A stretch of DNA of 64,000 nucleotides from Euprymna scolopes (lineage: Eukaryota), in NCBI GenBank assembly GCA_053919585.1, contig CM132787.1. One strand, given 5' to 3'. The notes beneath the pieces are model-generated. The model was not told the DNA's origin and did no database searches. It saw only the letters and a program-made list of their open reading frames with translations. Made by a program: the position numbers and the translations under genes. Shown here in pieces: positions 1 to 35,753 of the stretch; positions within the stretch are counted from its first letter, which is position 1, and the number at the start of each line of letters is the position of its first letter.

Positions 1-144
1 GTTTGTATTAAAAGCGATATAAAAATTCCGGAATTGGAATAACGGATTGAAGACGTTGCTATTTACGCATGCGCAACCGGATGTTGAAAACCGGAAATCT
101 GATTGCAAACATACAAGATCCATAGACTTTTAGTATTATATAGA
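1..144 (-). mobile_element. Probable 5' end of a non-autonomous Helitron running off the window start
   Basis: Minus strand reads A|TCTATATAATACTAAAAGTCTATGG, the A-TC(TATA..) start typical of Helitrons. The 3' end is not in the window. Confidence 0.4.
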
Positions 145-544
145 TTAGTCTTTAAATTACCAAAATTAAAGCTTCTTTGGTTGTCCGCTAAAATAGCCTT
201 ATAATGAAAATAATAATCGTTCCAATCGTAGGAGATTACTGGACCATATTTAAACCTGGCTATTTTTTCGATACAGATTGTAGTTACAATCCTTTGGACA
301 CTACGGGCCGATATATCGGCCCTGGAGACCTAGGGCAAAAAGGATACACGGATATTTCGTCCCTAATATAATCCTCTAATAGAATGGCTCTCATTAGGAA
401 CCAAAGGTTATTGTAAATTCACAACTACGAAGGTTTTACCATGTTTAATTTAATTTATATACAAAAGAAAACTCGTATGCAAATTTTTATTTTAACATAT
501 TTTCGGCACAACTTATTTCATAAATATTTTGCATATTCTTTTTT

Positions 545-18962: not shown

Positions 18963-19224
18963 CTTCAGAATAGTTTTTATTTAACAATCAGTTGTTATGG
19001 AAACGTGAGATTGTAGGTTTACAAACTATTACTGGCAGTAATATTTTTAAGTTATCCCATCTAAACCAGAATTGCTCGATATGCAAGATAGAGCAAATAA
19101 ATTAAATTGTAATTCAATTAATTTCAAAAAAAACTCTAATCGAAATGAAATGAAGTGGATGAGTTTCATATCAATAATTTTTATTCTTCTAAGCAAGACA
19201 AAGAATGATTCAGAAAATGAATTT

Positions 19225-19266
19225 CCTTAACCTATAGGGTTTCGATGTCTACCATCTCATCAGAGG
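19225..19266 (-). ncRNA. Type I hammerhead ribozyme with one stem III mismatch
   Basis: cct CTGATGA gatg-gtaga-catc GAAA ccc-tata-ggt TA agg. The core is intact, with a C:U mismatch in stem III and a UUA triplet. Confidence 0.8.
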
Positions 19267-19421
19267 AGAGAAAATATTAGTATGCACCCTATTTGCTAAA
19301 GTCAGTGAGACATGGAAAGTCAAAGTGAAAATAACTTTCTCTTTCACTTTGACTTTCCATGTCTCACTGACTTTAGCAAATAGGGTGCATACCTCAATAA
19401 CTATTTGCTAATATTTTCTCC

Positions 19422-19463
19422 CCTCTGATGAGATGGTAAGCATCGAAACCCTATAGGGTAAGG
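19422..19463 (+). ncRNA. Type I hammerhead ribozyme, consensus-perfect
   Basis: cct CTGATGA gatg-gtaag-catc GAAA ccc-tata-ggg TA agg. All core residues and stems I, II and III are present. GUA triplet, predicted cleavage after 19460. Confidence 0.92.
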
Positions 19464-19585
19464 AAATTAATTTTCTGAATCATTCTTTGTCTTGCTTAGA
19501 ATAATAAAAAAATATTTTATATGAAACTCAACCACTTCATTTGATTTCAATGAGAGTTTTATGAAATTCATTGAATTACAATTAA

Positions 19586-19635
<50 letters not shown>

Positions 19636-32750: not shown

Positions 32751-33532
32751 TACTTTGGCTCGAAACAGCAAATGATACATAGACATAAAAAAAAAATCTT
32801 CTCTCCTAAGAATAACAAATATATTCAAAATCAAATTCAATTTTCTCATTGTTAATACAGTCCCGCGCAACGCCGGGTAGCCCGGTTAATATAGTATATA
32901 TCTATATACGTTATAATTTATAATGCATGAGAAATATATCCAATGTAATATGTTTTAGAGTAATATGTTATGACTACTGGAATTTTGGTTTTTATTCAAG
33001 CGTCTTAATTTTAAAGTATTTTCTGTGAAACTTGTTAAGATATCTATCACTTAATCGAGAAAAGAACGACCACGTGACTGACGACCATGTTTGCCAATAA
33101 ATTCTGCCGGGCTTTGTTCTATTTCAGTTCTATTTCTATCTAAACAACGCGAATCGAATTCGCCTCTTAAAGACACCGTATATTTTAATGGAATCCACGA
33201 AGAAAGATCGATGCTTACTACCGAAACATCTGATCGTCTTCATGGTAACCATGTTACACTCCGTTCGAAAAGCGTTCTGATTAGTAACGAAAAGGATCTT
33301 CCATTAAGATTCGGCAACGTTCCTTCGCAGATTTACATTAGCTTTACTTTTCATTCCAGACGAAATTAATCTTGTCGGATAAACTGAAAACTATAGCATA
33401 TTTCTTCAGATATTTCAAAGAAAGATTCAATGCAATAATAATGAGTGCAAAGTTCGGCGATATAAGATAATATGTTAATGCATACACTTTTTCAAGTTAT
33501 GTAAATAATTTGTATTACGCGTCATAAACAAA

Positions 33533-33597
<65 letters not shown>

Positions 33598-33678
33598 TAA
33601 AACTGGTAATTAGTAAAAATCTGAACAGTGTGCAGAGCAAATATGTGTGTGTTTTTTTAATTACCGTTTTATCTGTTT

Positions 33679-33735
33679 GGTTACATATGTTCCAGATGTA
33701 GGACCATGTTTACGATCTAACAGCCTCGTCAGACC
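33679..33735 (-). ncRNA. Type I hammerhead with mutated core (GAAA to GGAA)
   Basis: ggt CTGACGA ggctgttagatc-gtaaacat-ggtcctacatct GGAA catatg TA acc. Confidence 0.7.
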
Positions 33736-34378
33736 TCAGAAAAGTTGTTGTTAGTATAATGAAGAAGTGTTTAAGAAGAAATGTGAAAAAAAGGGGCGTG
33801 GGGTGAGGTAGGAGATAATAAGGGTCAGGGAGACGGGTATTGCCAATATTGTTTTGAGTGTTAAGATACATTAGATTGTATTGTATGTGTTGGGGTAGCA
33901 GATTCAGGTAGGATTGGGTGGAGATATATGGATATAAACAGAGGGTAGACGCAGAAAGTATGGTAAAGAAAAGAAAAAGGAATGGGGTAAGAAAAGGAGG
34001 GTAGGGATTTTCAATTTTTAGGTTTTTAATTTTAACTACCATTTGCTTGTTCAGTAAGGTAAATTAAGTGGATGAGAGAGAGAGAGAGATAGGGAAGCGA
34101 GAGGGGAGAGAGGAAGTGCGAGAAAAAAAGAAAGGGAGAGGGAGAGGGGAAGGGTTAGTGTAGATGTGATGTCTTTTGACAGGTACAGGTTCATTAACAA
34201 AATTCGTTGTTGCTATACGTCGACTTGTCTATTTCAGTATACAGTGGGTTAACCCTAAAACGGAAATAGTGTCAATACCCGTCTCCCTACCCCCTTATTA
34301 CCTCCTACCTCAACCCCCACCTTTTTTTCGAATTTCTTCTGAAGAACTTTTTCCTAATACTAAAATCCACTGCTCTAA

Positions 34379-34435
34379 GGTCTGACGAGGCTGTTAGATC
34401 GTAAACATGGTCCAACATCTGAAACATATGTCACC
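34379..34435 (+). ncRNA. Type I hammerhead ribozyme with minimal palindromic stem III
   Basis: ggt CTGACGA ggctgttagatc-gtaaacat-ggtccaacatct GAAA catatg TC acc. GUC triplet, predicted cleavage after 34432. Stem I can extend through tcta/taga. Confidence 0.85.
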
Positions 34436-34464
34436 AAATAGATAAAACGGTATCAAAAAGTAAA

Positions 34465-34479
<15 letters not shown>

Positions 34480-34495
<16 letters not shown>

Positions 34496-35753
34496 GAAGT
34501 GTCTGTGTGTGTATCTGTCCGTCTGTCTGTTTGCATTTCCCTTGCTATAACTGTCAATTTTAAGTCTACAGACTCGAAATTAGATATACACGGTACGGAG
34601 ATTATGGAAAATCTTTCTCATCTGTTTTTGGCCAGAAATAAGCTGTTAAGGGGTCACATGTCAGCGATTTGACCTTTGAGAACTCTGCCAAAATCCTCCC
34701 CCAATTTTCGGTATGAACAATTGAAATTATAGATATATATTCCATGGACATGGATGTAACTGAATAACTTGATTGGAGCCCAAAACAATAAATCTTAAGG
34801 GTCATAAAGTGGTCAAAGTTAAAAAAGAAAACTTTGACCTCTATAGTCTCTACCAACTTACTCAGACAATTTCTGGTCTAAACATTTGAAATGTGACAGA
34901 AAGTGTATTCAGAAACAGGGCAAGCTTTCTGCATCGGTTGGGGTCGAAATTTTTAGTTATCAGTACATAAATGTATGTATGTATACATGTATGCATGTAT
35001 GTATGTTTGTGTGTATGTAGATATGTTTGCAAGTTTGCATAAATCTTTCAACAGAGGCGATGTATTTTCACGCTATCAGTATCGTTTTGTAGTGTGACCC
35101 CTCAGAAGACAAATACCGAAAAATTAGCTAAACACATTAATATGTTCATCTTCAACTGAGCGCTTTGCTACAGAGCGGTCGCTTTTTTCGCCGATATTTT
35201 CGAAAGCCATCCTCTCCTTTCGATTATCTATGTTTTTGATAGAAATGTATATAATACTACTTTGATAAGTATATTTTAATTTAAATAGGGATGGTATAAT
35301 AAACTTGTGGGGTCTGCGTTCGTGCCTGGCCTCCATAGGATGGAAATATGCACACACTTTAATAAATACTTTTCATACCTATCTGCGTAAGTATACTTTG
35401 ATAATAATGTTTCAGCTTGAAGAAATGTGGTATAATAAAATTATAGGGTGTTCGTTCGCGCCTGACCTCCATGGAATTGAAATATGTCACACAGTTTAAT
35501 AAGATTTGTTTAAAAATAGATCCACAGAGTATTGTGATAAGTTTTTCAGTGTGAACAGGTATGGGGTAATAAATTATGGGGTTTACCTATTTTATTTTTA
35601 CTTTCATCATATTTTGCTTTGGTTTTGATTCCACCAAATTCGAAGCTATCTCTTTACAACCCTTCATTTTCATAATCTATCATACTTTCATAAATTAGAG
35701 TCCATTTTGTTTAAGCTGTTTTGGAACCCAGTGAACGGCAGGGCCTTTTGCTA

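What the first reader, a model, noticed from the sequence alone, without database searches (positions are those of the whole stretch)
33596..34467. Second, unrelated inverted-repeat element with the same divergent twin-hammerhead architecture
Seen: ~220-bp inverted arms with a hammerhead on + (34379-34435; CUGACGA, 12-bp stem II, GAAA, palindromic CAUAUG stem III, GUC) and a GGAA-mutated twin on -. Both ends sit in (TA)n. Outside the core it shows no evident similarity to the 19-kb element. Established: minimal type I hammerheads with palindromic stem III are thought to cleave as dimers. Inference: two independent families with the same layout within 15 kb suggest a recurrent class of non-coding, TA-targeting, inverted-pLTR retrozyme-like elements in this genome.
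Basis: partly seen in the sequence, partly recalled or inferred. Interest (0 to 1): 0.8.

Follow-up and report, generated by a model that had tools for sequence, protein, structure and literature searches.

The report
Truncated Penelope-like retrotransposon with inverted partner
The 872-bp "twin hammerhead" palindrome is an old, dead insertion of a Penelope-like retrotransposon into a (TA)n microsatellite, made of two 5'-truncated copies joined head to head. This layout is a known by-product of how these elements integrate, so it is not a new class of non-coding element.

Summary
Arms of about 218 bp (82-85% identical) lie inverted at 33643-33860 and 34253-34466. A complete minimal type I hammerhead core sits on + (34382-34432). 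Its twin on - is degenerate (GGAA). (TA)n flanks both ends.

The stretch belongs to a very abundant repeat family in this 5.9-Gb genome. Other copies share the same 3' end and are 5'-truncated at scattered points from about 670 to over 4,390 bp. The longest run into an ORF. An intact 733-aa ORF of a related subfamily (66-67% identical) folds as a telomerase-like reverse transcriptase plus a C-terminal GIY-YIG nuclease. It carries the motifs described for the Hydra clade of Penelope-like elements (RWK, CxCX5C, no CCHH, (TA)n targeting).

The window element is therefore a 657-nt 3' fragment on - joined directly to a 218-nt 3' fragment on +. The first carries the optional roughly 50-nt "tail" and the second does not. 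In a genome-wide sample, close hammerhead pairs are all outward-facing, their junctions all differ, and partner arms share variants.

It is an ordinary Penelope-like insertion and not retrozyme-like. Self-cleavage and expression were not tested.

The parts
33535..33595 (.). (TA)30 microsatellite, left half of the insertion target
   Evidence: 22 of 29 other copies of the family also abut (TA)n at their 3' end
33596..33643 (-). 48-bp 'tail': an optional 3'-terminal extension of the long copy, absent from the right arm
   Evidence: left arm extends 48 nt beyond the right arm; 20 of 29 other copies carry it and 9 stop 46-58 nt earlier; it matches the PLE tail of PMC8557442 Fig. 2 and the two RT start sites of PMC11167929
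33596..34250 (-). Long 5'-truncated PLE copy: the last 657 nt of the family's 3' UTR/pLTR, about 11% diverged from a consensus of sampled copies
   Evidence: aligns to d3' 657..0 of a 4.4-kb copy at 79.5%; 24 differences in 215 positions from consensus
33672..33742 (-). Degenerate hammerhead: CTGACGA core present, GAAA changed to GGAA (33690-33693 on +), GUA triplet, extra stem II mismatch
34246..34255 (.). Head-to-head junction (GGGTTAACCC). The two 5'-truncated ends abut with about 2 nt of overlap and no (TA)n between them.
34253..34466 (+). Short inverted 5'-truncated copy (family positions d3' about 273..55), without tail, about 12% from consensus
34371..34445 (+). Minimal type I hammerhead with intact core: CTGACGA 34382-34388, stem II 34389-34420, GAAA 34421-34424, palindromic CATATG 34425-34430, UC with predicted cleavage after 34432
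   Evidence: 1 match, 0 expected; family alignment; the family consensus folds into helices I and II, and two copies pair through ACAUAUGU
34467..34491 (.). (TA)n, right half of the insertion target

Best explanation
The stretch is a relic of one integration of a Penelope-like retrotransposon with a C-terminal nuclease and Hydra-clade-type motifs into a (TA)n microsatellite. The element's GIY-YIG nuclease cut the TA repeat and its telomerase-like reverse transcriptase copied the 3' end of the element RNA from the DNA ends. Synthesis aborted early, which is 5' truncation. One cDNA of 657 nt started at the distal RT start site and so carries the tail. A second, inverted cDNA of about 218 nt started at the proximal site and so has no tail. 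The two were joined 5' end to 5' end. Each arm carries the family's pLTR hammerhead because that motif lies 35-90 nt from the element's 3' end. The divergent twin ribozymes are therefore a geometric consequence and not a functional unit. Shown here: family membership, 5' truncation, variable junctions, the link to the ORF, the RT and GIY-YIG folds, (TA)n flanks, and the two classes of 3' end. Inferred: a single event, priming on both strands or copy-back, and ribozyme activity in the master copies. The copy is old (11-12% from consensus), non-coding and most likely inert.
For: High copy number: 3,251 first-look candidates for the 872-bp query and 2,770 genome hits to a 31-mer of the hammerhead against 0 for the reversed control. 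Other copies match query 1-655 on one strand and continue beyond it, with 5' ends spread from 674 to over 2,160 nt in the sampled loci and to 3,454 and 4,395 nt in two extended copies. The 4.4-kb copy S26 (L033 plus L026) and L048 run from the shared 3' arm through about 3 kb of low-complexity UTR into an ORF with VVY...YIG motifs. That ORF has 58,847 first-look candidates in the genome. An intact 733-aa ORF of a related subfamily (66-67% identical, L047) was modelled at pLDDT 85. Its best PDB matches are telomerase TERT (3du5, E 1.9e-7), then retron and LINE-1 RTs. Its last 149 aa were modelled at pLDDT 88, with the GIY-YIG nucleases T4 EndoII and I-TevI on top (prob 0.96 and 0.93). Hydra-clade motifs are present (against PMC8557442 section 11). 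Other inverted partners have different junctions: 1064|224, 809|821, 923|772, about 4395|197, plus 15 more pairs. All 13 close pairs among the 200 listed hammerhead hits are outward-facing and none is convergent. Of the 15 fetched pairs, 13 of the 14 scored for tails carry the tail on exactly one arm. Partner arms share more derived variants than non-partners (1.2 against 0.42; 0 of 5,000 permutations reached the observed value). The window junction has no (TA)n between the copies. Literature: an inverted 5'-truncated copy and a tail at one end (PMC8557442); a PLE protein that cleaves and extends both strands and uses two internal RT start sites that define the tail (PMC11167929); min-hammerheads in pLTRs (PMC4209133).
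Against: No full-length copy with an intact ORF was recovered for the window's own old subfamily. The longest open frame was 638 aa, and the intact ORFs belong to subfamilies 61-67% identical in protein. Pfam and PDB sequence searches do not recognise the ORF, so the RT and GIY-YIG assignment rests on motifs and predicted folds, and the nuclease fold match is weak by E-value (0.05-0.17). The two window arms share only 3 derived variants in 218 nt, no more than each shares with random copies, so a single event is not proven for this particular pair. Clade placement was not tested by phylogeny. No cleavage or RNA evidence was obtained.
Confidence: 0.85

Rival explanations
1. The palindrome is a member of an independent, non-autonomous, retrozyme-like family whose defining structure is two divergent hammerheads, mobilised in trans.
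For: The layout recurs. About 10-16% of exact hammerhead hits in the listed samples sit in outward-facing pairs, and 8 of 15 fetched pairs have junctions within about 20 nt of each other, at d3' 150-170. A second, unrelated family shows the same layout 15 kb away.
Against: The junction sequence differs in every pair, including the short ones. No other copy has the window's 657|273 junction. Most family members are single arms with variable 5' truncation. The ribozymes are on opposite strands, so one transcript holds only one sense hammerhead, whereas known animal retrozymes are direct tandem repeats (10.64898/2026.07.22.740005). The arms are continuous with a coding element.
Confidence: 0.04
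2. The structure comes from two separate PLE insertions into the same (TA)n microsatellite at different times, which happen to lie head to head.
For: (TA)n is a strongly preferred target. The two window arms share no more derived variants than random copies do. The arm lengths are unequal (657 and 218 nt).
Against: The 5'-truncated ends abut directly with no TA repeat between them. Both arms are equally diverged from consensus, 11% and 12%. Across the genome, close pairs are always outward-facing, never convergent and only once direct, and partner arms share variants. Independent hits would not produce any of these patterns.
Confidence: 0.08
3. A single truncated copy was inserted and part of it was later duplicated in inverted orientation by a host process, such as fold-back repair or replication error at the TA repeat.
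For: Long (TA)n tracts are fragile and can form cruciforms. Palindromes can arise by fold-back repair.
Against: The right arm ends at the family's alternative 3' terminus (no tail, d3' about 55). That is the terminus used by 9 of 29 independent single copies and by the tail-less arm of the fetched pairs (at d3' 55-97). This points to RT initiation and not to random breakage. The pattern is specific to this element type and is reported for PLEs in general (PMC8557442).
Confidence: 0.03

Closest known systems
Penelope-like elements of the Hydra clade (Craig et al. 2021, PMC8557442)
   Same: [quoted passage not shown] RWK motif near the N-terminus. CxCX5C linker. No Cys between the GIY and YIG motifs (no CCHH). 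CxxC and CxH around the conserved E and N. Canonical hammerhead motif in the terminal repeat. Insertion into (TA)n. Partial tandems, inverted 5'-truncated partners and a tail at one end.
   Different: Units here are 4.4-4.9 kb with a 2.6-3 kb microsatellite-rich 3' UTR, whereas Hydra elements are described as generally under 3 kb. The DKT motif reads DKS in this genome's copy. Copy number is far higher (tens of thousands of candidates) than the 'small number of families' reported outside cnidarians. Clade placement was not tested by phylogeny.
Minimal PLE hammerheads (Cervera and de la Pena 2014, PMC4209133)
   Same: Type I topology, a long helix II, a short helix I, no helix III hairpin but a palindromic 15.x/16.x stretch (ACAUAUGU) that can pair between two copies, and a location in the pLTR.
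   Different: The paper notes a highly conserved G10.1-C11.1 pair, whereas here it is G-U, followed by a C-U mismatch. The tested PLE hammerheads cleaved poorly in vitro. Nothing was tested here. Rfam models do not detect it.
Animal non-LTR retrozymes (2026 bioRxiv preprint, 10.64898/2026.07.22.740005, which derives them from PLE pLTRs)
   Same: Short non-coding DNA carrying type I hammerheads derived from PLE pLTRs.
   Different: Retrozymes are direct tandem repeats whose transcripts carry several sense ribozymes and can give circular RNA. Here the two motifs are inverted, one is mutated, and the unit is not itself repeated.
5' inversion of LINE-1 by twin priming
   Same: A head-to-head arrangement generated during target-primed reverse transcription using both DNA ends. 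Two copies of this family (L012, S16) show the classic contiguous-inversion form.
   Different: In the window both arms carry the same 3'-terminal sequence, a duplication and not an inversion of adjacent segments. That pattern is the PLE type and not the L1 type.

Membership tests
Penelope-like element (EN+) | Reverse transcriptase most similar to telomerase RT | tested here: met
   The 733-aa ORF of a related subfamily (L047:5144-7342:-) was modelled at pLDDT 85. Foldseek against PDB gives TERT on top (3du5 E 1.9e-7; 7lma; Candida TERTs), then retron, DRT and LINE-1 RTs. Motifs IKDHK, FDIxxYYPSI and YRDDG are present. Pfam RVT_1 is seen only weakly, in one homolog.
Penelope-like element (EN+) | GIY-YIG endonuclease domain fused to the RT | tested here: met
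   VVY...YIG...R..H...E...N are invariant in 19 sequences. The C-terminal 149 aa were modelled at pLDDT 88. The top PDB matches are T4 EndoII and I-TevI (prob 0.96 and 0.93, E 0.05-0.17), with Hpy188I and UvrC further down. The E-values are weak.
Penelope-like element (EN+) | Variable 5' truncation with a common 3' end | tested here: met
   29 sampled copies have lengths from 674 to over 2,160 nt, extended copies reach 3,454 and 4,395 nt, and all share the same 3' terminus.
Penelope-like element (EN+) | Partial tandems (pLTRs) and inverted 5'-truncated partner copies | tested here: met
   Tandem ORF units occur 4.9 kb apart (L047) and 4.4 kb apart (L075). Twenty inverted pairs were found with differing junctions.
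Penelope-like element (EN+) | Optional 30-40 bp tail, often at one end only | tested here: met
   There are two classes of 3' end, 46-58 nt apart (20 against 9 copies). Of the 15 fetched pairs, 13 of the 14 scored, and the window pair as well, carry the tail on exactly one arm. The tail is somewhat longer than the published 30-40 bp.
Hydra clade of PLEs | CxCX5C linker, no CCHH in the nuclease, RWK motif, CxxC and CxH around E and N | tested here: met
   CNCLNKPQC is present, there is no Cys between VVY and YIG, and MRWK, CYLC..E and CKH are present. This was compared with the description in PMC8557442 section 11.
Hydra clade of PLEs | DKG motif changed to DKT | tested here: inconclusive
   The consensus of 18 homologs reads ADKT, while the copy from this genome reads ADKS.
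Hydra clade of PLEs | Short elements (<3 kb) | tested here: not met
   Tandem units are 4.9 and 4.4 kb, and the old subfamily has a roughly 3-kb low-complexity 3' UTR. The paper says 'generally', so this is a soft criterion.
Hydra clade of PLEs | Groups with reference Hydra families in an RT/EN phylogeny | not tested
Hydra clade of PLEs | Insertion into (TA)n | tested here: met
   22 of 29 copies have (TA)n directly at the 3' end, and several also have it at the 5' boundary. The window copy has it on both sides.
Hammerhead ribozyme, type I minimal (PLE type) | Conserved core CUGANGA ... GAAA ... UH | tested here: met
   The right arm is intact. The family consensus is intact with GUA. The left arm fails because it reads GGAA.
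Hammerhead ribozyme, type I minimal (PLE type) | Helices I and II, and a palindromic helix III that forms between two copies | tested here: met
   The consensus RNA folds into helix I (3+5 bp) and helix II. The homodimer forms the 8-bp ACAUAUGU duplex, at -52.0 against 2 x -21.4 kcal/mol. The window's right arm does not adopt the hammerhead fold at minimum free energy (A-C mismatch in stem II).
Hammerhead ribozyme, type I minimal (PLE type) | Match to the curated Rfam hammerhead models | tested here: not met
   There is no hammerhead hit at gathering score or at E<=10. This is expected for motifs without a helix III hairpin.
Hammerhead ribozyme, type I minimal (PLE type) | Self-cleavage | not testable with these tools
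   This needs in vitro transcription of monomer and dimer constructs.
Animal non-LTR retrozyme | Direct tandem repeats, each with a sense hammerhead, giving circular RNA | tested here: not met
   The two motifs are on opposite strands. Among the 200 listed genome hits, one close direct pair was seen against 13 divergent pairs. No RNA evidence could be obtained.

The most novel reading that the evidence does not exclude
The short, nearly symmetric twin-hammerhead palindromes of this genome have arms of about 150-270 nt, a tail on one arm only and a turn-around just 5' of helix I. They might be more than integration debris: a hairpin-shaped, PLE-dependent non-autonomous element or RNA source in its own right. 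A weaker but likelier version is that their regular geometry is an in vivo footprint showing that Hydra-type PLEs integrate by synchronous priming on both strands, or by copy-back, from an RNA whose 5' end lies about 160 nt from the pLTR end.
Probability: 0.05. Interest if true: 0.65.

Novelty: new member of a known kind. Interest (0 to 1): 0.22.

Why it matters
For the window itself it matters little, because this is a decayed retrotransposon fragment. It is useful for annotation. Divergent hammerhead pairs in (TA)n in this genome should be masked as Penelope-like insertions and not reported as ribozyme genes or retrozymes, and the same caution applies to the palindrome at 19.1-19.6 kb. Two by-products may interest transposon specialists. 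First, this large animal genome holds a very large expansion of PLEs with Hydra-clade motifs, including subfamilies with many copies that keep a 733- or 738-aa frame. Second, the inverted pairs are strikingly regular: always outward-facing, usually near-symmetric, and with a tail on one arm. That regularity fits the in vitro finding that a PLE protein extends both DNA strands from two RT start sites (PMC11167929) and could be mined as natural evidence for the integration mechanism.

Tried and rejected
- Rfam at gathering score over the whole window, and at E<=10 over 33400-34700, gave no hammerhead. The only hits were low-complexity TA matches to miRNA models.
- Pfam on the ORF pieces, the intact ORFs and 18 homologs gave nothing, apart from one weak RVT_1 hit in one homolog.
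- PDB sequence searches with the single protein and with a profile gave nothing, so I used predicted folds instead.
- Read laying on four runs returned only assembled contigs. The 'RNA?' runs cover the unique flanks at low depth just as the DNA run does, so they say nothing about expression, strand or cleavage ends. They show only that the hammerhead segment is the most repeated part.
- The supplements of PMC8557442 are not held, so no reference Hydra sequences were available and no tree was built.
- I tested whether the 19.1-19.6 kb family is the 3' end of the 733-aa or 738-aa subfamilies. It is not: the 733-aa unit (L047) carries a different hammerhead motif and BLAST against the 738-aa unit (L075) found nothing.
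- I considered and rejected reading the 390-bp interior as a private spacer or cargo. It is family 3' UTR.

Full report
**1. The observation**

The sequence is as described. The repeat finder reports inverted arms 33655-33794 and 34320-34459 at 85% complementarity, plus a second segment 33788-33824 and 34292-34328. A gapped alignment joins these into arms of about 218 bp, 33643-33860 against the reverse complement of 34250-34467.

The + strand carries CTGACGA, a 12-position stem II with 2 mismatches, an 8-nt loop, GAAA, CATATG and TC at 34382-34432. The pattern occurs once in the window and never in 100 shuffles. The twin on the - strand has GGAA in place of GAAA and one more stem II mismatch. 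(TA)n lies at 33535-33595 and 34467-34491. The element shows no real similarity to the palindrome at 19.1-19.6 kb.

- The left arm extends 48 nt further out (33596-33643) than the right arm.
- The interior is not private sequence (see section 2).
- Rfam finds no hammerhead, at gathering score or at E<=10.

**2. What it belongs to**

The window lies in a 5.9-Gb genome of 925 contigs. The 872-bp query has 3,251 first-look candidates there. Every scored copy matches positions 1-655 of the query on one strand, that is, the left arm plus the interior. Each matches positions 654-872 only as the reverse complement of that same arm. So the left arm and the interior form one continuous family sequence, with its sense on the window's - strand, and the right arm is a second, shorter copy in the opposite orientation.

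In the other copies homology continues past position 655. It ends at scattered distances from the common 3' end: 674, 692, 713, 749, 790 and so on up to 1,476, 2,087 and more than 2,160 nt. Two extended copies reach 3,454 and 4,395 nt. A fixed 3' end combined with variable 5' truncation is the signature of target-primed reverse transcription.

**3. The coding partner**

The 4.4-kb copy S26 (L033 joined to L026) runs from the shared 3' arm through about 3 kb of microsatellite-rich sequence into an open frame. That frame contains CNCNNKSQC, VVYKAT, YIG and a C-terminal CLLCLNEK. A second locus, L048, has the same order with a 440-aa frame.

This protein segment has 58,847 first-look candidates in the genome, in at least three subfamilies:
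- The window's old subfamily, whose nuclease-region hits are 80-91% identical to the query and whose longest frame found is 638 aa.
- Two younger subfamilies with many copies that keep 733-aa and 738-aa frames.

Pfam and PDB sequence searches do not recognise the protein, so I used structure prediction:
- The 733-aa ORF, modelled with 17 homologs, reaches pLDDT 85. Its best solved relatives are telomerase catalytic subunits (3du5, E 1.9e-7; 7lma; Candida TERTs), followed by retron, DRT and LINE-1 reverse transcriptases.
- The last 149 residues, modelled at pLDDT 88, match the GIY-YIG nucleases T4 EndoII and I-TevI best (prob 0.96 and 0.93, E 0.05-0.17), with Hpy188I and UvrC further down.

A telomerase-like RT fused to a C-terminal GIY-YIG nuclease defines an EN+ Penelope-like element. 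The finer motifs are MRWK, ADKS (ADKT in the homolog consensus), the CxCX5C linker, no cysteines between GIY and YIG, CxxC before the catalytic E, and CxH near the end. These are the ones Craig et al. list for their Hydra clade, which they also report as inserting into (TA)n and always carrying canonical hammerheads (PMC8557442 section 11). I could not run a phylogeny with reference sequences. The elements here are also longer than the 'generally <3 kb' given for Hydra. The clade assignment is therefore by motif only.

**4. The hammerhead**

In 33 aligned copies the consensus keeps the whole core. It reads CUGACGA, then GGCUGUU(A/G)GAUC, loop GUAAACAU, GGUCCAACAUCU, GAAA, CAUAUG, UA. The G variant repairs the A-C mismatch in stem II.

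The consensus RNA folds into helices I and II. Two copies pair through the 8-nt palindrome ACAUAUGU, at -52.0 kcal/mol against 2 x -21.4. This is the minimal, dimer-dependent architecture described for PLE pLTRs, which cleaved only weakly in vitro (PMC4209133).

The window's right arm keeps the core but has the A-C mismatch and does not adopt the hammerhead fold at minimum free energy. The left arm is inactive by sequence. In the younger subfamilies a hammerhead-like motif lies about 95-140 nt upstream of each ORF in tandem units 4.9 and 4.4 kb apart. That is the pLTR position.

**5. Is the divergent pair a unit?**

It is not. Among the first 29 copies and the extended loci I found inverted partners with these junctions, given as distances from the 3' end:

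| Locus | Junction |
|---|---|
| window | 657\|273 |
| L004 | 1064\|224 |
| L007/L021 | 809\|821 |
| L025 | 923\|772 |
| S26 | about 4395\|197 |
| L048 | a further pair, junction not measured |

L012 and S16 show two contiguous inversions of the twin-priming type.

Genome-wide, a 31-mer of the ribozyme has 2,770 hits against 0 for the reversed control, and a second exact 31-mer has 867. Among the 200 places listed there are 13 pairs closer than 2.1 kb. All 13 are outward-facing, none is convergent, and one further pair is direct.

I fetched 15 pairs:
- Their junction sequences are all different.
- 13 are nearly symmetric, with arms differing by 33 nt or less. Examples are 153|170, 149|157, 162|161, 253|274 and 473|505.
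- 8 turn around at 150-170 nt, just 5' of helix I.
- 13 of the 14 scored carry the roughly 55-nt tail on exactly one arm.

Partner arms share more derived variants than non-partners (1.2 against 0.42; 0 of 5,000 permutations reached the observed value), so a pair comes from one template.

At the window junction the two truncated ends abut at GGGTT/AACCC with no TA repeat between them. Both arms are equally old, at 11% and 12% from consensus. They share only 3 derived variants, so the single event is well supported for the class of pairs and only plausible for this particular pair.

**6. Mechanism**

The published picture fits. PLE insertions are highly 5'-truncated, and an inverted 5'-truncated copy often lies immediately adjacent. 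A 30-40 bp tail is often present at one end only (PMC8557442, Fig. 2 text). A purified PLE protein cleaves and extends both DNA strands and starts reverse transcription at two adjacent internal sites, and the interval between those sites is the tail (PMC11167929).

The two classes of 3' end seen here correspond to those two start sites. With tail there are 20 of 29 copies and without tail 9 of 29, and the ends lie 46-58 nt apart. The window element has one of each.

I therefore read it as one integration into (TA)n with cDNA made from both DNA ends. An alternative is copy-back, which would also explain the near-symmetry of most pairs. The cDNAs aborted at 657 and about 218 nt and were joined head to head.

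The symmetric class turning around at about 160 nt suggests a common RNA 5' end there, for example a pLTR transcription start, with RT initiating in the upstream pLTR. That last step is inference.

**7. Why it is not retrozyme-like**

Animal retrozymes are direct tandem repeats whose transcripts carry several sense hammerheads, and a recent preprint derives them from PLE pLTRs (10.64898/2026.07.22.740005). Here a transcript in either direction holds one sense motif and one antisense motif, one of the two is mutated, and the palindrome as such is not repeated elsewhere. A read-through transcript would at most form a roughly 215-bp imperfect hairpin.

**8. The neighbouring family**

The arm of the 19.1-19.6 kb palindrome has 943 candidates at 92-94% identity. 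Other copies are mostly single arms of variable length, from 278 to about 700 nt. That palindrome is therefore also not a fixed unit. I did not find its coding partner. It is not the 3' end of the 733-aa or 738-aa subfamilies.

**9. Verdict**

It is wrong on the main inference of an independent, non-coding, retrozyme-like class.
- The kind of element and its architecture are known, and this family is a new member.
- The host species was not determined. Its size and its 46 or more chromosome-scale contigs would fit a decapodiform cephalopod, a group where Penelope elements are reported as abundant (PMC8967140), but that is only an inference.

Noticed in passing
L059-L073 (own genome, e.g. G000:C3:48292301-48293002, C4:68565863-68566613): Inverted hammerhead pairs of this family are strikingly regular. 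All are outward-facing, 13 of 15 are near-symmetric, 8 turn around 150-170 nt from the 3' end, and the tail sits on exactly one arm in 13 of 14. Partner arms share variants. This looks like a mechanistic footprint of priming on both strands or of copy-back, and I did not find the symmetry described in the papers I read.
   Followed up: partly
L047:5144-7342 (-) and L075:3034-5247 (-); many places listed: Two younger PLE subfamilies have many copies that keep a 733-aa or 738-aa frame and give identical match scores to one query. They often occur in tandem (units 4.9 and 4.4 kb) or as head-to-head pairs, which suggests recent or ongoing activity. The nuclease segment has 58,847 first-look candidates genome-wide.
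   Followed up: partly
L012:1453-2535 and L031:8524-8706 joined to L031:8707 onward (S16): Two copies show the other kind of inversion. The inverted segment is the stretch directly upstream of the breakpoint, with 3-41 nt of overlap, as in LINE-1 twin priming.
   Followed up: no
window 34541-34942: The DNA just right of the (TA)n flank is another extremely abundant repeat. Summed contig word depth is 10^5 to 10^6 in every run laid, far above the unique flank at 33000-33520. It was not identified.
   Followed up: no
window 19098-19590: This palindrome carries a different minimal hammerhead (CTGATGAGATGG..CATCGAAACCCTATAGGGTA) on both strands. Its family has 943 candidates at 92-94% identity, mostly single arms of variable length, so it too looks like truncated 3' ends. 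No coding partner was found.
   Followed up: partly
S16 = L031:8707-10000 joined to L016:1-2160; S26 = L033:9450-10000 joined to L026:1-2158: The old subfamily has a roughly 3-kb 3' UTR made largely of degenerate TA/TG/CA microsatellite and internally repeated blocks of about 350-450 nt. That is unusually long for a PLE of this type.
   Followed up: no
window 33603-33736 and 34340-34473: In public runs of the same organism, the hammerhead segments have 10 to 100 times the summed depth of the rest of the element. The ribozyme-bearing end is therefore present in far more copies than any upstream part, as expected from heavy 5' truncation.
   Followed up: no
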